The notes: a model not told the origin generated them from the letters alone. A DNA stretch of 64,000 nucleotides from Octopus bimaculoides (GCF_001194135.2 NC_068988.1:44646216-44710215); one strand, 5' to 3'. Numbered from the stretch's first letter, positions 6,270-62,919 are shown. Translations and numbers: made by a program.

Positions 6270-6771
6270 NNNNNNNNNNNNNNNNNNNNNNNNNNNNNNN
6301 NNNNNNNNNNNNNNNNNNNNNNNNNNNNNNNNNNNNNNNNNNNNNNNNNNNNNNNNNNNNNNNNNNNNNNNNNNNNNNNNNNNNNNNNNNNNNNNNNNNN
6401 NNNNNNNNNNNNNNNNNNNNNNNNNNNNNNNNNNNNNNNNNNNNNNNNNNNNNNNNNNNNNNNNNNNNNNNNNNNNNNNNNNNNNNNNNNNNNNNNNNNN
6501 NNNNNNNNNNNNNNNNNNNNNNNNNNNNNNNNNNNNNNNNNNNNNNNNNNNNNNNNNNNNNNNNNNNNNNNNNNNNNNNNNNNNNNNNNNNNNNNNNNNN
6601 NNNNNNNNNNNNNNNNNNNNNNNNNNNNNNNNNNNNNNNNNNNNNNNNNNNNNNNNNNNNNNNNNNNNNNNNNNNNNNNNNNNNNNNNNNNNNNNNNNNN
6701 NNNNNNNNNNNNNNNNNNNNNNNNNNNNNNNNNNNNNNNNNNNNNNNNNNNNNNNNNNNNNNNNNNNNNNN

Positions 6772-6806
<35 letters not shown>

Positions 6807-10776: not shown

Positions 10777-10990
10777 TAAGGCAGCAAGCTGGCAGAATCA
10801 TTATCACACCAGGTAAAATGCTTAAATGCATTTTGTCTGTTTTTACATTCTGAGTTCAAATTCTATTGAGGTCGACTTTGCCTTTCAAGGTTGATAACAT
10901 AATTACCGATTGAACACTGAGGCTCCATGTAATTGACTTACCCTTTCCCCAGAACTTGTGGACCTTGTGCCAAAATTTGAAACCAACATT
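10777..10990 (+). mobile_element. SINE family B, diverged
   Basis: TAAGGCAGCAAGCTGGCAGAATC...GAGTTCAAATTC...GGTCGACTTTGCCTTTCA...CCTTGTGCCAAAATTTGAAAC. Confidence 0.8.
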
Positions 10991-13097: not shown

Positions 13098-13402
13098 NNN
13101 NNNNNNNNNNNNNNNNNNNNNNNNNNNNNNNNNNNNNNNNNNNNNNNNNNNNNNNNNNNNNNNNNNNNNNNNNNNNNNNNNNNNNNNNNNNNNNNNNNNN
13201 NNNNNNNNNNNNNNNNNNNNNNNNNNNNNNNNNNNNNNNNNNNNNNNNNNNNNNNNNNNNNNNNNNNNNNNNNNNNNNNNNNNNNNNNATTTATAGCAAA
13301 CCTCCCTATGAGGAGCTCATCTGTGCAACCTAACATCTCTCCTTCTTCCCTCTTTCTTCCCCTCCCTTCTCTCACTATCTCAGTTGCCGTTAGTTCTATA
13401 CC

Positions 13403-13635
13403 TATTTCTTTACTGCCCACAAGAGGCTACACACAGAGAGGACAAACAAGGACAGACAAACGGATTAAGTCGATTATATCGACCCCAGTGCGTAACTGGT
13501 ACTTAATTTATCGACCCCGAAAGGATGAAAGGTAAAGTCGACCTCGGCGGAATTTGAACTCAGAACGCAGTGGCAGACACAATACCGTTAAGCATTTCGC
13601 CCGGCGTGCTAACGATTCTGCCAGCTCGCCGCCTT
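13403..13635 (-). mobile_element. SINE family B, young full-length copy with TSD
   Basis: Minus-strand head AAGGCGGCGAGCTGGCAGAATCGTTAG...GAGTTCAAATTCCG and central CCTTTCATCCTTTCGGGGTCGATAAATTAAGTACCAG (resembles the Meta-domain of MetaSINEs from memory; unverified). CpGs are intact. Flanked by TAGTTCTATACC (13391-13402) and TAGTTCCATACC (13639-13650). Confidence 0.9.
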
Positions 13636-14316: not shown

Positions 14317-14479
14317 TGCTGTGTGAGTGATCAGTGTCTAACGTGTTAATGTCGTAGTGAGAGGTCAGCAGCTATAGTGACAGATCTGTGTATGGGTGAT
14401 TGTGACAGTGTGTTGTGCGTTCTTTTGCACATGTGCGTAGATGGGATGGTCAGTAGTGAGTCAGGAGCAGTTTGAAGGC

Positions 14480-14543
<64 letters not shown>

Positions 14544-15044
14544 NNNNNNNNNNNNNNNNNNNNNNNNNNNNNNNNNNNNNNNNNNNNNNNNNNNNNNNNN
14601 NNNNNNNNNNNNNNNNNNNNNNNNNNNNNNNNNNNNNNNNNNNNNNNNNNNNNNNNNNNNNNNNNNNNNNNNNNNNNNNNNNNNNNNNNNNNNNNNNNNN
14701 NNNNNNNNNNNNNNNNNNNNNNNNNNNNNNNNNNNNNNNNNNNNNNNNNNNNNNNNNNNNNNNNNNNNNNNNNNNNNNNNNNNNNNNNNNNNNNNNNNNN
14801 NNNNNNNNNNNNNNNNNNNNNNNNNNNNNNNNNNNNNNNNNNATTCCAAGATTAAGACAAAGAAATTATTTTATATGAGACTTCGCTAATAAATAGACAA
14901 TTGTTGCAAAAGAAAAAAAGCTTACAGCATTCAATTATTAAACATTCATAATTGGAATAAATAAATAAAATTGAATATTAAGTATTAATGGAATTTTGAT
15001 TTACAGTCGAGTGACTTTTGGCCAGCCATATATATTCCTTATTC

Positions 15045-15460
15045 TGTTATTCTTTTATTTGTTTCAGTCATTTTACTGTGGTCATGCTGGAGCACCGTCT
15101 TTAATCGAACAAATCGACCCCGGGACTTATTCTTTGTAAGCCTAGTACTTATTCTATCGGCCTCTCTGGCCGAACCGCTAATTCACGTGGACGTAAACAC
15201 ACCAGCATCGGTTGACAAGCGATTTTGAAGGGGGGAAGAAACAGACGCACAAACATATACATCCACACACATACATACACACACGCACACACATATACGA
15301 TGGGCTTCTTTCAGTTTCCGTCTACAAAATCCACTCACAAGGCTTTGGTCAGCCCGAGGCTATAGTAGAAGACACTTGCCCAAGGTGCCACACAGTGTGA
15401 CTGAACCAGAAACCATGTGGTTGGTAAGGCAAGCTACTTACCACACAGCCACTCCTGCTC
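15045..15460 (-). mobile_element. SINE family A, full length
   Basis: Complete reverse-complement match to 8101-8482. Confidence 0.9.
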
Positions 15461-15461
15461 T

Positions 15462-15484
<23 letters not shown>

Positions 15485-15492
<8 letters not shown>

Positions 15493-16350
15493 AATATATG
15501 CATATATCCATACATATATGTACATACCTACATCTATATGTATATGTACATATACATATATACGCATATATGGGTACAGGACATCAAAAATCGTTAAACA
15601 CAATGAGAAACGAAAACATAGAAAACGAGCTTTTTTCGAACAACGAAAAAGAAGCAGAGAAATGAGACATGCAACATAAAGAGTGTACCCCTTCGTCAGT
15701 TGTCCCTGTTTCATCTACTCCACGTTTGGAAGGCAAGGACAAGACGCGACTTTGTTGAAACAGTCCTTCCTGCAAAGCAAATTAAATAAAATTTGGGATT
15801 TTTTGCGGTGGGTGAAAGTGTTAACAAGAACAGGACAGTGAGAACAAGACTGTAAAAACAAACGGTGAGGGTTGTTGAGCCAAGACGGTAGAAAAATTAT
15901 TATGAACGCTAGGTAGACGAGCCACGAAGGAGACAAGTGAGGCACGACTTTTCTTTAGGAAGGAAATGGACAGAAACATAGATCCCCTTTCTTCGTCACG
16001 TGTCAGCGACGAGAGAGTGGGAACGGTGAAAGGGAGAAAAGAATAGGGAAAGGATGAGAGAGAAATACAGAAAGGATGAAGAACAAGAGAGGGAGAGAGA
16101 TAGACAAAGAAGAGTTAGTAGAAGACTGCGCATCGTAATTATTAAGATAAAACTTACTTGGAAAAGGATGCGTGGCGTTCGATCATATAATAATATAAAT
16201 AATATATAAATATATGCATATATATATATACATATATGTATATACCTACATCTATATGTATATATACATGCATATATGGATAGAGGACATCAAAAAAACG
16301 TTAAACACAATGAGAAACGAAAATATAAAAACGAAAACATAGAAAACGAG
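15485..16350 (-). repeat. Element with ~150-bp terminal direct repeats (15485-15630 and 16195-16350); possible Penelope pseudo-LTR tandem
   Basis: Both ends read ATAATATAAATATATGCATAT...CCTACATCTATATG...GGACATCAAAAA.CGTTAAACACAATGAGAAACGAAAA...CATAGAAAACGAG. The class is inferred only. Confidence 0.5.
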
Positions 16351-22110: not shown

Positions 22111-22399
22111 TATAATAGAGCTTGAAGGCGAAGCGATCTTAACGAAGTTGTATAGAATGATATACTAAGTGGACTAGGTACTTTGCACCTCTTAGAAATG
22201 TGGATCTTGTACATAAATCAGAAACAATTATTCCCAGTATTCTGCCCTTTCATTTATGAGTGGAACAAGTAATATACTGTTTAATAAAAATATAGCAATA
22301 AACTGATAAAAAAGAGAAAAAGAAAGCAAAGGAGCAGAAATGTTACAAATATTCTTTTCTATTCTAGGCGCAAAGCCCGAAATTTTGGGCGGATAAATA

Positions 22400-23092
22400 A
22401 AAATAACAAGGATGCACAGTATGACAGAAGAAGATACATCAGTACCAGTGCGGCTTTTTTGCGCATCTTCAATTTTCCCATTCATGAGAGGCACCCAGTC
22501 ATCCTTCATCTGAGTGTCCATCTAGAGAATGGCCACAAGGTTATCTTTACAAAACAAACAGCCTTGCAACAAGCACTTTCTCCAAAAGAAACTACTCTTA
22601 CTGTCTTTTTTAAGTTGTGTCAAGTAGATGAAAATGCAAGAAAACTTCTTTATCTACAATTACTCAAGTATTACACCCGGAGAAACAATAAATGGCACAA
22701 GAGGAAACGGGCTGACACCTTTTTTGCACTTATACTGAACATGTCTCAACTTGGCAGTCCCCTACAGCTTTGGATGAAACATCGTGAGGACATGGCTGAG
22801 GACTTAAAGTATGCAGTTCAGTAGGCAAACCCAGATATCAATATTCAGCTCTCCGAAACAATTTTTAACCGAGCACTGATTGAAATTGAGAATCAAGTTT
22901 TGGTCATGGGAGGCAAAATTTTCAAGTGTCTGGCTTTGGACTGCCAAAAACAAACCGTGAAATTAGTGATTTAGCTTCAAGAGATATTGTAAGAGAGACA
23001 AATTATGACATCACAGAATTGGCTGCATTTGTGAATCAACATGAACCTAAACTTCTTCCAGAACAACGCTGTGCATATGATCAAATTTTTCG
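22400..23092 (+). pseudogene. Helitron Rep/helicase fragment
   Basis: RYIS...RIFNFPIHERHPVILHLSVHLENGHKVIFT...PKETTLTVFFKLCQVDENARKLLY (Helitron Rep C-terminal motif), an internal deletion, then PLQLWMKHREDMAED and L(L)PEQRCAYDQI just upstream of where the PIF1 helicase would start. Confidence 0.88.
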
Positions 23093-23146
23093 TTTATTAT
23101 TATTATTATTATTATTATTATTGTTATTAGAAGTAGTAGTAGTAGC

Positions 23147-23189
<43 letters not shown>

Positions 23190-23348
23190 TTACAAATACG
23201 GGTAAGGTCNNNNNNNNNNNNNNNNNNNNNNNNNNNNNNNNNNNNNNNNNNNNNNNNNNNNNNNNNNNNNNNNNNNNNNNNNNNNNNNNNNNNNNNNNNN
23301 NNNNNNNNNNNNNNNNNNNNNNNNNNNNNNNNNNNNNNNNNNNNNNNN

Positions 23349-23397
<49 letters not shown>

Positions 23398-23539
23398 TGT
23401 GTGTGTATGTGTTTGCGTTTGCGTGTGTGCACATAACTTGTATGTAAAATGGGTTAATGTGCCTCATTTATATTCTCTATATGCATGCTCAAAGACACTC
23501 ACATAGCCCCTCCTATATATATATATATATTATTTATAT

Positions 23540-23931
23540 GCCTGTGGCACGTAAAAGCACCTTCTGAGTGTTGGGTCTTATGGAAGCAAGGACCGAGACC
23601 ATTTGGCATTATGCCATGTTTTGAGCATTAGGCCTCATGGAAGCAGTGACCGAGTTCTTTTGGCATTATGGGTTGCTTGAGAAGAAGACCCATCAAGCCA
23701 AGTAAAACTGCAGTTGTGACAGATACTGGTGTCACACAAATGGCACTCCTGCCGGTGGCATGTAAAAGCACGCATTACACTCTCGGAGTGGTTGGTATTA
23801 GGAAGGGCATCCAGCCATGGAAATCATGCCAAAACAGACTGGAGTCTGATGCAGCCTTCCAGCTTGCCAGCCCTGGTCAAACCATCCAACCTATGCCAGC
23901 ATGGACAATAAGCGTTAAATGATGATGACGA

Positions 23932-23933
<2 letters not shown>
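23540..23933 (+). mobile_element. RTE-type LINE/SINE 3' tail (family D)
   Basis: GAGTGGTTGGTATTAGGAAGGGCATCCAGC...AAACCATCCAACC...GTTAAATGATGATG; shared with 28825, 33110, 45330, 54875 and 63640. Confidence 0.75.
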
Positions 23934-23966
<33 letters not shown>

Positions 23967-24324: not shown

Positions 24325-24825
24325 CACACATATATGTATATATGTTTGAAAGAGAAACATAGACAACGTGCATGAACACCCCTTCATATGAAACAAACTA
24401 TGAACATTACGTGTTTAGCTCGCATAAACGCTGTGCCCAACCAATATGACTAGGGAGAAATAATGCAAATGAATGCTCCAATGAACGCTATAATGCTGTC
24501 TAAAAATATTCACATACCATGTAAGGTGACATCAATGTCTGCTAGGTGGATTTCGTGTCTGTCAAGAAAGCTTCTTCATAATCATTTTACCACTTTATTA
24601 TTATTATTTTAATATTAATGACGATGGATGAAGAGAAAACATTTGTATTACTCTGTTACTGCTGTTTCTGAATGTGGCTCCAGTGTTAATAATGCAATAC
24701 TTATCTCTACAAATGATCAGATATATGTATAATATTGGGATTTTGACAACTGTTATTCTTATAGAACTTACATATACCTGAGTAAGATTACTAGAACTAT
24801 TTTACCAGTGATTAGGAAAGATATC

Positions 24826-25932
24826 TGATATGTCCCGCATTGTGACGATGTTTCCTTGTCTGGGTGACTGGCTTCAACAGCGTACCTTGCTGACTGACAC
24901 TACTTACTGAGTCTGTCCACTATTTATTAGTAGTGAACCAGCCCACCTCTCACCTAGGGGTGTCCGCCACAACACCTCCCCCTTTTGAAAATTTTTTCTA
25001 CTTTCAATACAACATTATATTTTTTTCTTTATTTCTTTGTCTTCCACACACAGAAATATTTTTCTCTTCTTATTCAGAAATTTTCTTGTTCTATGCAGAA
25101 TATATTTTGTTTTCACAATGCTGCAGGTGGTACCAGTCTACATTAACGTATAGCGACCTGACTTAAATCTTTTGAATGAACTCATTATTATTATTATTTT
25201 TTGTTCCACACAGAACCATGTTTTTTTTCTTCAAAATGCCGCAGGTTGTACCAGTCTACATTGTATACTGCTAGTGCTACTACATAGAGCGACCTGACTC
25301 AAATCCTTCAAACGGACTTATATTATTTTTCACTGTGTGTAGTTCAGTTCTGTGTTAGAGTTCCAATTTTGTCAGGCTTTTTTTTTCTTCAGAATCTTTT
25401 TATTTTTATATATTTTTCACTGTGTGTATATTACTTTTCACTGTGTGAAGTTCAATTCTGTGTTAGATTTCCTGTTTTATCTGACATTTTTCTTTCAGAA
25501 TCTTTTTTATATATTTTTCACTGCATGTAGTTCAGTTCTGTGTTAGAGCTGCAATTTGTCAGACATTGTTTTCTATATATTTTTCACTGTGTAAAGTTCA
25601 GTTATTTGTTAGAGTTCTAGTTTTATCTGACAATTTTTTTCTTCAGAATCCTTTTATTTTCTTCTTCAGATTCGTTTTTCTTATATATTTTTCACTGTGT
25701 ATATATTATTTTTCACTGTGAAATTCAAATCCCACCTCAGGATTTTTAACATTTTTCCACTGCACGAGCTCTGAATCCTCGTTGCCACTGATATGCCTCA
25801 CATTATGATGACGTATTTCATCATCTGCATGACTGGCCTGAGCGTACCATGCTGACTGATATTACTTAATGAGTCTGTCCACTATTAGTAGTGGACCAGC
25901 TCACTTTTCACCTGGGGGTGTCCGACACAACA
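24826..25932 (-). mobile_element. Non-autonomous LTR retroelement (TRIM-like)
   Basis: LTRs 24826-24974 and 25789-25932 (TG...CA, roughly 78% identical by eye); TSD ATATC (24821-24825, 25933-25937); PBS TGGCAACGAGGAT (25787-25775); PPT AAAAGGGGGAGG (24986-24975). The interior is non-coding with tandem subrepeats. Confidence 0.88.
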
Positions 25933-26671
25933 ATATCTAACGCAGCTACTTAGCAAAGTAATTTCTTTTGGATTATCTTATCCAAGCAAACAAGAAAAAG
26001 AAAATAAATCCTGCAAAAGGATGAAAGATATTCAAAAATATATTTATGCAGGCCCTGCTTTGTTATATAATTCATAGCCTACAGAGTGGCTTCCCCCCTC
26101 TCTCTCTCAATATACATGTTATTACAAAACTCGTTTATGATGTTTGATTAAATGTACTCAGAGAATAGACTGAATTATAAACAGTACCAAACTCAAATTA
26201 TAGTTTTATATATTCTGATTTTATTTTCCTAACTTATGAACGTTGGGCCAATATTTAATGTTTGTTCATGCAAAACATGGAATTACACAGAATATGGGAT
26301 TTGACTATACAAGTGCAAAGGAATATACATTTTCATAAGACTTTGAACTTTGAACTTTTTTTATTTCTCAGTTATGACCATACCCTTCCCTCTTTTCTTA
26401 TCTTCCCCACACTACTTCCTAAAATTAACATCTTGAAAGGTCACCAGCCCTTGTGAGAAAATGTGTTTATTTACAAATATGCTGATAGGTATACAATGGG
26501 GAAAAAGAAGAAAAAAAGAACAAGAAGAAAAGCGAAAAGAAAAAATGAAAAATGATTTATAATGAAATTTCAATGGGTTGACCACATCAAATTGAAAAGA
26601 AACCATTCTCTCTCTCCCATCCCTCTCTCTCTCTCTTCATCTCTCTCCCTCCCATAATGATGATGATATAT

Positions 26672-27170
26672 AGGCATAGGAGTGGCTGTGTACTAAGTAG
26701 CTTGCTTATGAACCACATGGTTTCCGGGTTCATTCCTACTGTGTGGCACCTTGGGCAAGTGTCTTCTACCATAGCCTTCGGCCGACCAAAGCCTTCGGCC
26801 GACCAAAGCCTTCGGCCGACCAAAGCCTTCGGCCGACCAAAGCCTTCGGAGGACCAAAGCCTTGTGAGTGGATTTGGTAGATGGAAACTGAAAGAAGCCC
26901 GTCGTATATATATAAATATATGTGTGTGTGTATGTATGTATGTATGTGTGTCTATATGTTTGCGTGTCTTTGTTTGTCCCCCAACATCGCTTGACAACCC
27001 ATGCTGGTGTGTTTACATCCTGTAACTTAGCGGTTCGGCAAATAAGACTGACAGAATAAGAACTAGGCTTACAAAGAATAAGTCCTGGGGTCGATTTGCT
27101 CGACTAAAGGCACTGCTCCAGCATAGCCATAATGAAATGACTGAAACAAGTAAAAAAGAAAAAAAGAAAT
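26672..27170 (+). mobile_element. SINE family A with internal 17-bp x5 expansion
   Basis: Full head, body and tail; AGCCTTCGGCCGACCAA tandem at 26773-26857. Confidence 0.9.
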
Positions 27171-28824: not shown

Positions 28825-29345
28825 CAATGCCAGCTCCACCTGACTGGCCCCCATGCCAGTGTCATGTAAAAAGCACCCACTACACTCTTGGAGTGGTTGC
28901 TATTAGGAAGGGCATCCAGCTGTAGAAACCTTGCCGGATCAGATTGGAGCCTAGTACAGCCACCTGGTTTGCCAGATCAGATTGGAGCCTGGTGCAGTCC
29001 CCTGGCTTACCAGATCAGATTGGAGCCTGCTGCAGTCACCTGGCTTGCCAAATCTATTTGGAGCCTGGTGCAGTCTCCTGGCTTGCCAGATCAGATTGGA
29101 GCCTGGTGCAGCCTTCTAGCTTGCCAGATCAGATTGGAGCCTGGTGCAGCATCCTGGCCTACCAGATCAGATTGGAGCCTGGTTCAGCCTCCTAGCTTGC
29201 CAGATCAGATTGGAGCCTGGTGCAGCCTTCTAGCTTGCCAGATCAGATTGGAGCCTGGTGCAGCCTCCTGGCTTACCAGTCCTCAGTCAAACCATCCAAC
29301 CCAGGCCAGCATGGAAAGCAGATGTTAAACAATGATGATGATGAA
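28825..29345 (+). mobile_element. RTE-type 3' tail (family D) with 38-bp x9 minisatellite expansion
   Basis: Unit GCCAGATCAGATTGGAGCCTGGTGCAGCCTYCTRGCTT repeated about 9 times (28934-29275) where other copies have one unit. Confidence 0.85.
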
Positions 29346-29919: not shown

Positions 29920-30130
29920 AGATTTCAAATTTTGGCACAAGGTCAGCAAGTTCAGGGGTCAGGTTAAGTTGATTATATCAGCCCCTGTGCTCAACTGGTA
30001 CTTATTTTATTGACCCTGAAAGGAGGAAAGGCAAAAGTCATCTTTGGTGGAATTTAAAGAATGTAACGACGGACGAAATGTCACTAAGTATTTGCCCCAG
30101 CTTACTAGCAATTCTGTCAACCTGCTGCCT
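29920..30130 (-). mobile_element. SINE family B
   Basis: TTTCAAATTTTGGCACAAGG...TTGACCCTGAAAGG...GGTGGAATTT...CAATTCTGTCAACCTGCTGCCTTA. Confidence 0.75.
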
Positions 30131-30162
30131 TAATAATAGCAATAATAAAAATAAAAATAATG

Positions 30163-30194
<32 letters not shown>

Positions 30195-30408
30195 CCTTAA
30201 TATTATATGCACAAGGTCTGAAATTTGGGGGAGAGAGATGGTCGATCACATTGAGCTCAATGCCTCACTGGTGCTTAATTTACTGACCCTGAAAGGATGA
30301 AAGGTAAAGCTGACCTTGGCGGAATTTGAACTCAGAACATAGCAACGGGTGAAATACTGCTAAGCATTTCCCCCAGCGTGCTAACAATTCTGCCAGCTTG
30401 CCACCTTA
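30195..30408 (-). mobile_element. SINE family B
   Basis: GACCCTGAAAGGATGAAAGGTAAAGCTGACCTTGGCGGAATTTGAACTCAGAAC...TCTGCCAGCTTGCCACCTTA. Confidence 0.85.
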
Positions 30409-30519
30409 ATAATAATGATAATAATAATAATAATAATAATGATAATAATAATAATAATAATAATAATGATAATAATAATAATAATAATAATAATGATAAT
30501 AATAATAATAATAATAACA

Positions 30520-30590: not shown

Positions 30591-31140
30591 GTCGTAAGGC
30601 AGTACCAGGCACTTGTTCACATATCTTCTGATCTTAACTGACTGGAAGTGTTATCATGCATTTTATACATTGGTATAAAAGATGGACTGCAACAAATATT
30701 CTGCTCAATACCACAAATTTGCTTGTTAGTTGCTTCACCTTAATTAGTTGAGCATGTCCCTTAGTGGCTGATGATATATGCATCCCTGATCATGAGCAGA
30801 AGTAGCAGGGGAGCACCATGGTCATGTGTTGAGAATTCTTTGGGGTTTGGATAATTCACCTCAGGAAACCTGAGTGTTTCTTAATATCCTTAAACAAGCC
30901 TTATTCAGGGACCTTTTGAGTGGGATGGGCTACTCAACCTGAATAAAATTCTAACTGGGCTTCACCTGCAAGGTCATGGACTGTTTATCTTGATATAAGT
31001 TCACCATGTTGTGCACACATGTTTGTGATGTATGTACCTGGTGTACCCTTATCAGACAGGTAATTGTGATGGGTATATTGGGCTTCATATATTCATACCC
31101 TAGCATCACTTTGATGGCATGCACTGCTCTCTCACTCAAT
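30591..31140. mobile_element. ~550-bp interspersed repeat flanked by (AAT)n; class uncertain (probable non-LTR UTR)
   Basis: The second partial copy at 31400-31671 matches 30600-30870; both lie in AAT-type microsatellites. No ORF. Confidence 0.6.
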
Positions 31141-31154
31141 AATAATAATAAGGA

Positions 31155-31375
31155 AAATGGTTTCAAATTTTGGTGTAAGGCCTGTAATTTTAGGGAAAGG
31201 AGTTAATCAATTACATCGACCCCAGTGCTCAACTAGTAATTAATCAACCTTGAAAGGACGAAAGACAATGTCAACTTTAGCAGAATTTGAAGTCAGAATG
31301 TAAAAACAAATGTGGAAGAATTGCTGCTAAGCATTTTGTCCAGCATGCTAACAATTCTGCCAGTTTACCATTTTA
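31155..31375 (-). mobile_element. SINE family B
   Basis: TTTCAAATTTTGGTG...ATCGACCCCAGTG...TTTGAAGTCAGAATG...CAATTCTGCCAG. Confidence 0.75.
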
Positions 31376-31399
31376 ACAACGATGACAACAACGACGACA

Positions 31400-31671
31400 A
31401 CAATACAGGCACTGGTTCTCATGGCTTCTGATCTTAACTGATTGGAAGTAGTATCATGTACATTGTTTTGTCTTGGTATAAAAGATGGGCCACAGCAAAT
31501 ATTCTGCTCAATACCACAGATTTGCTTGTCAGTTGTTTGACCTTAACCAGTTAAGTATGTTCCTTGGTGGCTGATGATAAGTGCATCCCTGATCATGAGT
31601 AGAAGTAGTTGGGGAGCATCATAGCCATGTGTTGGGAGGAATTCTTTGGGTTTTGAATACTTCACCTCTGG
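31400..31671. mobile_element. Partial second copy of the 30591-31140 repeat
   Basis: GGCTTCTGATCTTAACTGATTGGAAG...TTCACCTC aligned by eye. Confidence 0.7.
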
Positions 31672-34029: not shown

Positions 34030-34165
34030 GGTACTTATTTTATTGACAGTGAAAGAATGAAAGGCAAAGTCAACCTTGGTAGAATTTGAACTCAGAACAT
34101 AAAGATGGATGAAATGCTGCGAGGCATTTTGTCCAGTGTGCTAATGATTCTGCCAGCTTATTGGC
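34030..34165 (-). mobile_element. SINE family B 5' half
   Basis: GAAAGGCAAAGTCAACCTTGGTAGAATTTGAACTCAGAAC...GATTCTGCCAGC. Confidence 0.75.
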
Positions 34166-54064: not shown

Positions 54065-54300
54065 ACAAAACCGCATCTACCACCTATAGAATAAAACCAA
54101 ATCTGTATTTTAGAATCATCAGTAGAAAATCACTTTTCAGAGCTAGCTCTCATTCCCGAATTTGAAAACGATGCAACTTGAGCCTGCTAAAAAGCTTGGA
54201 AATCATAATGTTGAAAGATATTCTCTTGCACAGAATCACCAGACGAACTCCTTCAAGCGTTTACAGAACTTGTAAGACATACGCAAGTTTCCATCACATG
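54065..54300 (+). repeat. ~230-bp direct repeat, copy 1 (copy 2 at 55270-55470)
   Basis: CTACCACCTATA..AAAACCAAATCTG...TTCAGAGCTAGCTC...CTTGGAAATCATAATGTTG.AAGATATTCTC...GAACTCCTTCAAGC...GTAAGACATAC.CAAGTTTC in both. Confidence 0.85.
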
Positions 54301-55215: not shown

Positions 55216-55269
55216 ATTGTTCCAAACTATTTTTTTTTACCTATGATCCCCTTTGATTATTATTTTACT

Positions 55270-55470
55270 CTACCACCTATAAAACAAAACCAAATCTGCA
55301 GAAAATCAGTGTTCAGAGCTAGCTCCCATTGTTGAAGTGGAAAACAGTACAACTTAAGCCTGCTAGAAAACTTGGAAATCATAATGTTGTAAGATATTCT
55401 CCTGCACGGAATCACTAGATGAACTCCTTCAAGCATTTATAGAACCTGTAAGACATACACAAGTTTCACC
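55270..55470 (+). repeat. ~200-bp direct repeat, copy 2
   Basis: Aligns to 54065-54300. Confidence 0.85.
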
Positions 55471-56497: not shown

Positions 56498-56546
<49 letters not shown>

Positions 56547-57297
56547 ATATATATATANNNNNNNNNNNNNNNNNNNNNNNNNNNNNNNNNNNNNNNNNNN
56601 NNNNNNNNNNNNNNNNNNNNNNNNNNNNNNNNNNNNNNNNNNNNNNNNNNNNNNNNNNNNNNNNNNNNNNNNNNNNNNNNNNNNNNNNNNNNNNNNNNNN
56701 NNNNNNNNNNNNNNNNNNNNNNNNNNNNNNNNNNNNNNNNNNNNNNNNNNNNNNNNNNNNNNNNNNNNNNNNNNNNNNNNNNNNNNNNNNNNNNNNNNNN
56801 NNNNNNNNNNNNNNNNNNNNNNNNNNNNNNNNNNNNNNNNNNNNNNNNNNNNNNNNNNNNNNNNNNNNNNNNNNNNNNNNNNNNNNNNNNNNNNNNNNNN
56901 NNNNNNNNNNNNNNNNNNNNNNNNNNNNNNNNNNNNNNNNNNNNNNNNNNNNNNNNNNNNNNNNNNNNNNNNNNNNNNNNNNNNNNNNNNNNNNNNNNNN
57001 NNNNNNNNNNNNNNNNNNNNNNNNNNNNNNNNNNNNNNNNNNNNNNNNNNNNNNNNNNNNNNNNNNNNNNNNNNNNNNNNNNNNNNNNNNNNNNNNNNNN
57101 NNNNNNNNNNNNNNNNNNNNNNNNNNNNNNNNNNNNNNNNNNNNNNNNNNNNNNNNNNNNNNNNNNNNNNNNNNNNNNNNNNNNNNNNNNNNNNNNNNNN
57201 NNNNNNNNNNNNNNNNNNNNNNNNATATATATATATATATTTATATATTTATATATACATACATACATACATACATGCATATTTATATTTACATACA

Positions 57298-57353
<56 letters not shown>

Positions 57354-60782: not shown

Positions 60783-61179
60783 TTAAGNNNNNNNNNNNNN
60801 NNNNNNNNNNNNNNNNNNNNNNNNNNNNNNNNNNNNNNNNNNNNNNNNNNNNNNNNNNNNNNNNNNNNNNNNNNNNNNNNNNNNNNNNNNNNNNNNNNNN
60901 NNNNNNNNNNNNNNNNNNNNNNNNNNNNNNNNNNNNNNNNNNNNNNNNNNNNNNNNNNNNNNNNNNNNNNNNNNNNNNNNNNNNNNNNNNNNNNNNNNNN
61001 NNNNNNNNNNNNNNNNNNNNNNNNNNNNNNNNNNNNNNNNNNNNNNNNNNNNNNNNNNNNNNNNNNNNNNNNNNNNNNNNNNNNNNNNNNNNNNNNNNNN
61101 NNNNNNNNNATATATATATATATACATACATGCATACATTCATATGTATATCTATATCTGTATCTATCTATCGATCTAC

Positions 61180-62180: not shown

Positions 62181-62886
62181 GAAAGTATTAATTTCGAAAC
62201 ATGTTTACAGATAATTGTATTTTTTTATGTAATTTTCACTGGTCTTACCCGTTCACGTTTTTGTTACTTTGCTAAATTCCCTTTGAGAATTATTCGGTCT
62301 TAGTAGACACATGACATGTGATCTTCTTCTAGCACATTAGCAGTCCACCTAGTGGCCTCCTTTATATATATTTTTATATATACATATACAATAATCCTTT
62401 GAGATCTCAGATATTTTTTTCTCTGAATCTCACTGATTCTTTTAATGTGCTTGTTCCCTGGTATTAAATTGATATTAATTAATATCCAATTTTTTACCCT
62501 ATTGTCTAATTATATAGATAGATAGATAGATATCTATATTTATATCTATATCTATATCTATATANNNNNNNNNNNNNNNNNNNNNNNNNNNNNNNNNNNN
62601 NNNNNNNNNNNNNNNNNNNNNNNNNNNNNNNNNNNNNNNNNNNNNNNNNNNNNNNNNNNNNNNNNNNNNNNNNNNNNNNNNNNNNNNNNNNNNNNNNNNN
62701 NNNNNNNNNNNNNNNNNNNNNNNNNNNNNNNNNNNNNNNNNNNNNNNNNNNNNNNNNNNNNNNNNNNNNNNNNNNNNNNNNNNNNNNNNNNNNNNNNNNN
62801 NNNNNNNNNNNNNNNNNNNNNNNNNNNNNNNNNNNNNNNNNNNNNNNNNNNNNNNNNNNNNNNNNNNNNNNNNNNNNNNNNNNNNN

Positions 62887-62919
<33 letters not shown>

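What the first reader, a model, noticed from the sequence alone, without database searches (positions are those of the whole stretch)
24821..25937. Complete miniature LTR retroelement (TRIM-like) with PBS, PPT and TSD but no coding capacity
Seen: two ~145-bp direct repeats bounded by TG...CA, a perfect 5-bp flanking duplication ATATC, AAAAGGGGGAGG immediately before the minus-strand 3' LTR, and TGGCAACGAGGAT one base after the minus-strand 5' LTR. Established: eukaryotic tRNA-Ser(GCU) ends ...AUCCUCGUCG-CCA, whose complement TGGCGACGAGGAT matches 12/13, and the mismatch is a CpG-type transition. An AATAAA lies in the 3' LTR on the minus strand and is deleted in the other LTR. Inference: a non-autonomous element mobilised in trans by a Gypsy-type partner, old given LTR divergence of roughly 20%. 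LTR elements are a minor class in octopus, and I do not recall such a family being described there.
Basis: partly seen in the sequence, partly recalled or inferred. Interest (0 to 1): 0.72.

Follow-up and report, generated by a model that had tools for sequence, protein, structure and literature searches.

The report
Old miniature LTR retrotransposon, octopod DNA
A 1.1-kb decayed, non-coding LTR retrotransposon insertion with every structural hallmark of its class sits at this site; it is an ordinary mobile-element relic, mildly notable because such miniature elements do not seem to be reported from cephalopods.

Summary
Two direct repeats (24826-24974, 149 bp; 25789-25932, 144 bp) start with TG and end with CA. 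They are flanked by a perfect ATATC duplication. On the minus strand a 12-nt polypurine tract abuts the 3' LTR. A 13-nt site that matches the complement of the tRNA-Ser(GCU) 3' end at 12/13 lies one base after the 5' LTR. These features coinciding by chance has a probability of roughly 1e-11, so this is a genuine integrase-made LTR retroelement insertion.

The 814-bp interior has 22-35 stops per sense frame and no Pfam match. About 700 bp of it is two degenerate tandem arrays. The LTRs carry no tRNA-like or 5S-like sequence. LTR divergence (K2P 0.19) suggests an insertion about 25 million years old.

Three things could not be tested. No cephalopod genome is searchable here, so copy number is unknown. 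The autonomous partner (Gypsy or other) is unknown. It is also unknown whether the coding region was already missing at insertion or was deleted afterwards at this locus.

Verdict: a new member of a known kind (TRIM-class non-autonomous LTR element), of low to moderate interest.

The parts
24821..24825 (.). Target-site duplication, left copy (ATATC)
   Evidence: Read directly. Identical to 25933-25937. The empirical chance of a 5-mer match at this spacing is 0.0027.
24826..24974 (-). 3' LTR of the element (sense strand is minus), 149 bp, TG...CA
   Evidence: Aligns to 25789-25932 at 119/142 identity, E = 4e-31. Homology stops exactly at the TG and CA.
24923..24928 (-). AATAAA hexamer on the sense strand, present in this LTR only. 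It is created or lost by a 4-bp AATA slippage unit.
   Evidence: Alignment columns 47-50. Its function as a poly(A) signal is not shown.
24915..24938 (-). Palindrome GTCCACTA-N8-TAGTGAAC inside the 3' LTR (counterpart at 25877-25896)
   Evidence: Read directly, plus the self-hit. The one stem difference gives a G.U pair on the minus-strand RNA. Folding z-scores are not significant.
24975..24986 (-). Polypurine tract AAAAGGGGGAGG, abutting the 3' LTR
   Evidence: Read directly. The probability that a position is preceded by 12 purines is 0.0054, and 0.001 if the run is G-rich.
24987..25774 (-). Non-coding interior. It holds tandem array A (about 25029-25330, 2 units of about 140-165 bp) and array B (about 25319-25745, 5 degenerate units of 60-113 bp).
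   Evidence: Repeats. There are 22-35 stops per sense frame, no ORF over 35 aa on the sense strand, no Pfam hit in six frames and no Rfam hit at E<=10.
25775..25787 (-). Primer-binding site TGGCAACGAGGAT, 12/13 complementary to the 3' end of tRNA-Ser(GCU)
   Evidence: Published primer for human tRNA-Ser(GCT) (PMC9072684). It is the only window hit with one mismatch or fewer. It lies 1 nt (25788) from the 5' LTR.
25789..25932 (-). 5' LTR of the element, 144 bp, TG...CA
25877..25896 (-). Perfect palindrome GTCCACTA-TTAG-TAGTGGAC inside the 5' LTR
   Evidence: Self-hit. Predicted as a hairpin in the minimum-free-energy fold.
25933..25937 (.). Target-site duplication, right copy (ATATC)
   Evidence: Read directly.

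Best explanation
This is a relic of one retrotransposition event by a short, non-coding LTR retrotransposon of the TRIM class.

Inferred life cycle, following the established LTR-retrotransposon mechanism:
1. An RNA running from the R region of the 5' LTR to the R region of the 3' LTR (sense strand is the window's minus strand) was packaged into particles made by an autonomous LTR element.
2. The 3' end of cellular tRNA-Ser(GCU) annealed to the PBS and primed minus-strand DNA.
3. The RNase H-resistant polypurine tract primed plus-strand DNA. The two strand transfers produced identical LTRs.
4. The partner's integrase joined the CA-3' ends to a 5-bp staggered cut at ATATC, and repair duplicated those five bases.

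Since then the copy has decayed neutrally. The LTRs differ by 23 substitutions and 3 indels, and the PBS carries one CpG-type change. The copy is almost certainly immobile now.

Shown here: the anatomy, its strand consistency, the lack of coding capacity, and the absence of pol III-type small-RNA modules.

Inferred: trans-mobilisation, the identity of the partner (probably Ty3/Gypsy on priors), the U3/R/U5 boundaries, and an age of about 25 My.

The confidence given (0.65) is for the whole statement, including that the element was already non-coding when it inserted. That it is a genuine LTR-retroelement insertion I hold at about 0.95 or more.
For: - LTR pair with exact TG..CA boundaries.
- Perfect 5-bp TSD.
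- PPT abutting the 3' LTR and a PBS 1 nt after the 5' LTR, both on the same (minus) strand and at the correct ends.
- PBS 12/13 complementary to the tRNA-Ser(GCT) 3' end as given by a published primer, and unique in the window.
- Joint chance of the hallmarks is about 1e-11. The PBS term is analytic: 40/4^13 per site x 6 offsets x about 50 tRNAs, which is about 2e-4.
- Control: none of the 22 other direct-repeat pairs in the window shows these features at its homology boundaries.
- No ORF and no Pfam domain.
- The interior tandem units are about as diverged from one another as the two LTRs are. Ungapped unit copies are 65-91% identical and gapped alignments 75-80%. This is compatible with the arrays being present before or around the time of insertion.
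- Size and LTR length match animal TRIMs. ta-TRIM has 198-bp LTRs and a 590-bp interior. PbTRIM is 480-781 bp.
- The transition excess (17:6), with several changes at CpG sites, fits neutral decay.
Against: - Only one copy is visible. No second copy, solo LTR or partner lies in the 64-kb window or in the 20.6 kb of O. bimaculoides DNA that could be fetched.
- No cephalopod genome could be searched, so family membership and trans-mobilisation are unproven.
- The 814-bp interior is larger than in classic TRIMs (100-300 bp). It could be the leftover leader and 3' UTR of a full-length element.
- No convincing promoter, or poly(A) signal shared by both LTRs, was identified.
- The octopus tRNA-Ser(GCU) sequence itself was not available, and the PBS has one mismatch to the human sequence.
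Confidence: 0.65

Rival explanations
1. A full-length autonomous LTR retrotransposon (gag-pol, several kb) was inserted here. Later an illegitimate-recombination deletion at this locus removed its whole coding region. What remains is the LTRs, the PBS with leader, and the 3' UTR with PPT. On this reading the element is not a member of a non-autonomous family.
For: All insertion hallmarks are explained equally well. The 814-bp interior is long for a TRIM and consists of tandem arrays. Such arrays are a known feature of the untranslated regions of Ty3/Gypsy elements (own knowledge). Only one copy is seen.
Against: No trace of gag, protease, RT, RNase H or integrase remains in any frame. The deletion would therefore have had to remove the coding part exactly while sparing both priming sites. 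TRIM-class families of about 1 kb with 150-200-bp LTRs are documented in several animal phyla. The LTRs are very short for an autonomous animal Gypsy element (own knowledge).
Confidence: 0.27
2. A chance local duplication of about 145 bp that merely resembles an LTR element.
For: There is only a single copy in the accessible sequence. The window is rich in dispersed and tandem repeats.
Against: TG..CA at the exact homology ends, a perfect flanking 5-mer, a 12-nt PPT abutting one repeat and a tRNA-complementary TGG site 1 nt from the other all occur on one strand in the right order. The joint chance is about 1e-11. No other repeat pair in the window shows this.
Confidence: 0.01
3. A small-RNA-derived TRIM (Helenus, Cassandra or Ajax type) whose LTRs carry a tRNA-like or 5S-like pol III promoter and which is transcribed by RNA polymerase III.
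For: On the sense strand the LTR reads TGGCG...GGTTC about 30 nt apart in one copy, faintly like A and B boxes (read). Helenus occurs in molluscs, specifically bivalves (PMC10886601).
Against: ARAGORN finds no tRNA. Rfam finds no tRNA, 5S or SINE match even at E<=10. The other LTR copy reads TGTCG...GGTCC, so the motifs are not conserved. Animal Helenus elements make 4-bp TSDs.
Confidence: 0.02

Closest known systems
TRIMs of animals: ta-TRIM (taeniid cestodes, PMC4558846) and PbTRIM (ants, PMC3532108)
   Same: Two short LTRs (about 150-200 bp) with TG..CA. A non-coding interior of a few hundred bp that begins with a tRNA-complementary PBS a few bases from the 5' LTR and ends with a PPT at the 3' LTR. 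A short TSD. Overall length of about 0.5-1 kb.
   Different: No sequence similarity is expected or tested. Those elements use tRNA-Leu primers, whereas this one matches tRNA-Ser(GCU). PbTRIM makes 4-bp TSDs, whereas this one most likely makes 5 bp. Those are documented multi-copy families with solo LTRs, and ta-TRIM has a candidate partner. Here a single old copy is known. The interior here is longer (814 bp) and mostly tandem repeats.
biv-TRIM of bivalve molluscs (PMC6934838)
   Same: A mollusc host, the TRIM architecture, and a G-rich PPT (GGGGAGA there, GGGGGAGG here).
   Different: biv-TRIM has 202-218-bp repeats, a 77-80-bp interior and no recognisable canonical PBS. Its published primer sites and its conserved inner motif are absent here. 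This element has a clear tRNA-type PBS.
Helenus, Cassandra and Ajax (TRIMs with tRNA- or 5S-derived LTR modules, PMC10886601)
   Same: Non-autonomous LTR elements with a PBS, a PPT and 4-5-bp TSDs. Helenus is found in molluscs.
   Different: No tRNA-like or 5S-like sequence occurs in these LTRs.
Ty3/Gypsy LTR retrotransposons of Octopus (the presumed autonomous partners)
   Same: TG..CA LTR ends, a 4-6-bp TSD, tRNA priming and a PPT. In O. bimaculoides, all 275 LTR-retrotransposon copies that the LTRharvest step of PMC6238403 could assign to a superfamily were Gypsy. A later RepeatMasker step in that paper also detected Copia elements. Most recently active LTR families in O. vulgaris are Ty3-like.
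   Different: This element encodes nothing. No Gypsy element sharing its LTR ends or PBS could be looked for.

Membership tests
LTR retrotransposon (structural class) | Two terminal direct repeats that begin with TG and end with CA | tested here: met
   24826-24974 and 25789-25932. Homology ends exactly at TG and CA.
LTR retrotransposon (structural class) | 4-6-bp target-site duplication flanking the element | tested here: met
   ATATC on both sides, p about 0.003. A 4-bp ATAT parse is possible but non-canonical.
LTR retrotransposon (structural class) | PBS complementary to a tRNA 3' end (starting TGG) within a few bases of the 5' LTR | tested here: met
   TGGCAACGAGGAT lies 1 nt from the LTR. 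It matches the human tRNA-Ser(GCT) primer sequence at 12/13. The octopus tRNA was not available.
LTR retrotransposon (structural class) | [quoted passage not shown] | tested here: met
   AAAAGGGGGAGG abuts the LTR on the minus strand.
TRIM (terminal-repeat retrotransposon in miniature) | Small size (typically 0.5-1 kb; <4 kb in the Wicker-type definition) with LTRs of about 100-250 bp | tested here: met
   1107 bp with LTRs of 149 and 144 bp. This is slightly above the strict <1000-bp usage and within the broader usage.
TRIM (terminal-repeat retrotransposon in miniature) | Interior without coding capacity for gag or pol | tested here: met
   22-35 stops per sense frame. No Pfam hit.
TRIM (terminal-repeat retrotransposon in miniature) | Multi-copy family: several copies and solo LTRs with the same boundaries and different TSDs, showing mobilisation as a non-autonomous unit | not testable with these tools
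   No cephalopod genome is searchable. There is no copy in the window or in L001. Collection scans were empty. The protein-database route is blind to octopus repeats, as the SINE control shows, so carry no weight.
Helenus / Cassandra / Ajax (small-RNA-derived TRIMs) | tRNA-like or 5S rRNA-like sequence with pol III boxes inside the LTR | tested here: not met
   ARAGORN found none. Rfam found none at gathering threshold or at E<=10.
biv-TRIM (bivalves) | Sequence similarity to the biv-TRIM terminal repeats and the conserved inner motif TGATCCCAAAGGAC | tested here: not met
   No match within 5 mismatches to either published primer site. The best inner-motif match is 9/14.
LARD (large retrotransposon derivative) | Non-autonomous LTR element larger than 4 kb | tested here: not met
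   The element is 1107 bp.
Ty3/Gypsy-dependent element | Shares LTR termini, PBS and TSD length with an autonomous Ty3/Gypsy element of the same genome | not testable with these tools
   No autonomous LTR element lies in the accessible sequence. Only the literature prior is available.

The most novel reading that the evidence does not exclude
The copy is the first recognised member of an undescribed cephalopod TRIM family primed by tRNA-Ser(GCU). On this reading, many dispersed copies and solo LTRs exist in octopod genomes. The family has an identifiable Ty3/Gypsy partner. It was active around the 25-33 My LTR burst reported for Octopus vulgaris. Its short LTRs and palindrome may have been scattered near genes.
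Probability: 0.3. Interest if true: 0.4.

Novelty: new member of a known kind. Interest (0 to 1): 0.27.

Why it matters
TRIMs are short and often escape standard repeat pipelines. In animals they have been characterised in only a handful of lineages. In the paper library searched, no paper among the listed results combined the TRIM phrases with cephalopod terms. The recent O. vulgaris repeat annotation lists only Ty3-like and 'other' LTR families.

If genome-wide searches show a family, it would add a class of elements to cephalopod repeat libraries and improve masking. It would also give a datable marker for octopod phylogeny, through the presence or absence of TSD-bounded insertions. The shared PBS and LTR ends would offer a handle for identifying the active Gypsy partner.

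As a single decayed copy it has no evident effect on the host. It is ordinary genome archaeology.

Tried and rejected
1. Other copies in the window. BLASTN of each LTR, the interior and the joined flanks found only the LTR-LTR match and the internal tandem repeats. There was no paralogous empty site.

2. Exact-protein look-ups of ORFs in and near the element in public assemblies. Nothing was on record.

3. Protein-space search with the ORF that spans the LTR end, PPT and interior. There were no candidates. An exhaustive HMMER search of 1.84 billion representatives with the 90-aa open frame gave 0 hits. A control query from an interspersed SINE-like repeat in the window (my own recollection is that this is an abundant octopus SINE; three related units are visible in the window) also found nothing. 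These databases therefore do not hold ORFs from octopus repeats, and the negatives are uninformative.

4. Exact-pattern scans with LTR-core and PPT/LTR-junction patterns. The metagenome (2 scans), viral and prokaryote-genome collections gave 0 hits, as expected for animal DNA.

5. Fetching O. bimaculoides DNA through a Helitron protein hit gave 20.6 kb (L001). It shares other repeats with the window but has no copy of this element.

6. tRNA-like or 5S-like LTR hypothesis: rejected.

7. biv-TRIM relationship: rejected.

8. LTR RNA folding. The palindrome folds as a hairpin in one LTR, but overall z-scores (-1.5 and -2.7) and only two sequences give no basis for a structural claim.

10. A literature string search for the neighbouring SINE-like repeat's sequence found nothing.

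Full report
**What is in the sequence**

- The left repeat is 24826-24974 (149 bp) and the right repeat is 25789-25932 (144 bp).
- On the plus strand both start TGATATG and end CACAACA. On the minus strand each therefore reads 5'-TGTTGTG...CATATCA-3'.
- Similarity stops exactly at these dinucleotides on the outer and inner sides.
- BLASTN between the repeats gives E = 4e-31, and they have no other match in the 64-kb window.
- They differ by 17 transitions, 6 transversions and three indels covering 9 columns. Identity is 83.8% over aligned bases and 78.8% with gaps. K2P is 0.188 and JC 0.182. Several transitions are at CpG sites.

**Hallmarks and strand**

- ATATC lies immediately outside both ends (24821-24825 and 25933-25937).
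- On the minus strand the 12-nt purine run AAAAGGGGGAGG (24975-24986) directly abuts the repeat at 24826-24974. That makes this repeat the 3' LTR.
- TGGCAACGAGGAT (25775-25787) lies one base (25788) beyond the repeat at 25789-25932. That makes this repeat the 5' LTR.
- PBS and PPT thus agree on one sense strand and sit at the correct ends.
I found a published primer-extension oligonucleotide for human tRNA-Ser(GCT), 5'-TGGCGACGAGGATGGGATTCGAACCCACGCGT (PMC9072684). This confirms that TGGCGACGAGGAT is the complement of that tRNA's 3' end including CCA.
- The element matches 12/13, and the difference is a G>A at a CpG. I could not obtain the octopus tRNA. There is no tRNA gene in the window.

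**Is it more than chance?**

- In the window's own composition, a 5-mer match at this spacing has probability 0.0027.
- A position preceded by 12 purines has probability 0.0054.
- TG and CA dinucleotide frequencies multiply to 0.006.
- The PBS is the only site in both strands of the window within one mismatch of the tRNA-Ser complement. With up to two mismatches, 0.23 sites are expected and two are seen.
- Allowing about 50 tRNA species and six offsets gives about 2e-4 for a PBS of this quality at that place. This term is analytic.
- The product is about 1e-11.
- As an empirical control I listed all 23 direct-repeat pairs of 80 bp or more in the window. I tested each for TG..CA plus a 4-6-bp TSD within 12 nt of the homology ends. 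Only this pair has them at the boundaries. One widely spaced pair of dispersed repeats (about 250 bp each, 71% identical, 12.2 kb apart) gave a 4-bp coincidence within the slop.
- The structure is therefore a real integrase-type insertion, even though only one copy is visible.

**Interior**

- The 814 bp between the LTRs carry 22-35 stop codons per sense frame.
- There is no sense-strand ORF longer than 35 aa.
- There is no Pfam match in any of the six frames.
- About 700 bp consist of two degenerate tandem arrays. Array A has two units at about 25029-25330. Array B has about five units of 60-113 bp at about 25319-25745.
- The units are about as diverged from one another as the two LTRs are. 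Ungapped unit copies are 65-91% identical and gapped alignments 75-80%. This is compatible with the arrays being present before or around the time of insertion, but the spread is wide and it does not prove it.

**LTR content**

- No tRNA-like, 5S-like or other Rfam family is detectable, even at E<=10. The element is therefore not of the Helenus, Cassandra or Ajax type described by Kojima (PMC10886601).
- Both LTRs hold a palindrome, GTCCACTA-N4/8-TAGTGGAC (24915-24938 and 25877-25896). The single stem difference is a G.U pair on the sense RNA. With two sequences and unremarkable folding z-scores I make no structural claim.
- The AATAAA in the 3' LTR is produced by a 4-bp AATA/AATAAATA slippage difference. 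It may be ancestral or may have arisen after insertion.
- I could not define U3/R/U5.

**Source organism**

A Helitron remnant 1.7 kb to the left of the element (about 22389-23092) gave protein hits annotated as helitron_like_N or ATP-dependent DNA helicase. The hit with the highest identity is an Octopus bimaculoides protein. The 20.6-kb O. bimaculoides locus around that gene (L001, GCA_001194135.2) shares the Helitron and several other interspersed repeats with the window at 80-90% nucleotide identity. The locus holds no copy of the element.

**What could not be tested**

That needs a cephalopod genome, and none of the searchable collections holds one.
- Pattern scans of metagenome, viral and prokaryote collections were empty.
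- Exact look-ups of ORFs in public assemblies were empty.
- Protein-space searches with the ORF crossing the LTR/PPT junction were empty.
- A control query from a SINE-like interspersed repeat in the window, which I recall as an abundant octopus SINE, was equally empty. These negatives say nothing about copy number.

**Mechanism and history**

The anatomy implies the standard LTR-retrotransposon cycle:
1. tRNA-Ser(GCU) primes minus-strand synthesis at the PBS.
2. The PPT primes plus-strand synthesis.
3. Strand transfers regenerate identical LTRs.
4. Integrase joins the CA ends across a 5-bp stagger at ATATC.

Because the element encodes nothing, the proteins came from elsewhere. Classifiable LTR elements in octopus genomes are almost all Gypsy/Ty3 (PMC6238403; PMC13282606), so a Gypsy partner is the best prior. 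It is not shown.

The time calibration implied in PMC13282606 is JC 0.09 at about 25 My and 0.2 at about 56 My. With it, the LTR-LTR distance of 0.18-0.19 gives about 25 My. This is an inference, and it is sensitive to CpG decay and gene conversion.

The main rival is that a full-length element was inserted and lost its interior here afterwards. The complete lack of coding remnants and the very short LTRs speak against this rival. The long, repeat-rich interior and the single visible copy speak for it. I put it at roughly one in four.

**Comparison and verdict**

- The architecture matches animal TRIMs such as ta-TRIM (198-bp LTRs, 590-bp interior, 9-nt tRNA-Leu PBS) and PbTRIM (480-781 bp, tRNA-Leu PBS, 4-bp TSD).
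- It is unrelated to the bivalve biv-TRIM, which lacks a canonical PBS and whose published motifs are absent here.
- In a paper-library search combining the TRIM phrases with cephalopod terms, none of the 15 listed results contained a TRIM phrase. Repbase and Dfam could not be consulted.
- This is a new member of a known kind.

Noticed in passing
window 22389-23092 (+), ORFs 22459-22824 and 22926-23447: A frameshifted Helitron remnant. Protein hits are annotated helitron_like_N or ATP-dependent DNA helicase. It is 82-86% nucleotide-identical to an O. bimaculoides locus (L001 9862-10770). Pfam gave no hit for these fragments.
   Followed up: partly
window 26657-27025 (17-bp tandem ACCAAAGCCTTCGGCCG x5.6 at 26768-26863); related text at 15349-15714 and 41717-42082: A SINE-like interspersed repeat with an internal 17-bp tandem expansion and a microsatellite tail, 0.8 kb to the right of the element. 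No homologue appears in the protein databases, which shows those databases lack ORFs from octopus repeats.
   Followed up: partly
window 13403-13635, 565-740, 38043-38274, 29964-30472, 31177-31391, 34030-34160, 10777-10946, 44146-44278 versus L001 3953-4132, 7814-8057 and 8329-8578: Several interspersed repeat families are shared with the O. bimaculoides chromosome CM046606.1 at 70-90% identity. One family occurs at least six times within the window. None was classified.
   Followed up: no
window 28930-29279: A 38-bp minisatellite (9.2 copies, 87% matches) that reads through as an open frame (ORF 28888-29328). A related segment lies at 23741-23934.
   Followed up: no
window-wide, e.g. 1100-1700, 6270-6790, 13100-13290, 14350-14850, 40020-40800, 56540-57300, 60790-61120, 62570-62890: About 3.9 kb of N runs (assembly gaps), nearly all bordered by (TA)n, (TG)n or (CA)n microsatellites. 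This is typical of a short-read draft assembly of a microsatellite-rich genome.
   Followed up: no
window 54076-54291 / 55269-55467, 30606-30865 / 31406-31671 and 15467-15628 / 16185-16334: Three other closely spaced direct-repeat pairs (80-83% identity, 0.5-1 kb apart). None has TG..CA plus a TSD at its boundaries, so they look like neighbouring copies of dispersed repeats rather than LTR elements.
   Followed up: partly
window 24825 and 25788: The base just outside the TG of both repeats is C. The insertion can therefore also be parsed as a 4-bp TSD (ATAT) with LTRs ending CAG and a PBS abutting the LTR. Only an empty site or other copies can settle 4 versus 5 bp.
   Followed up: partly
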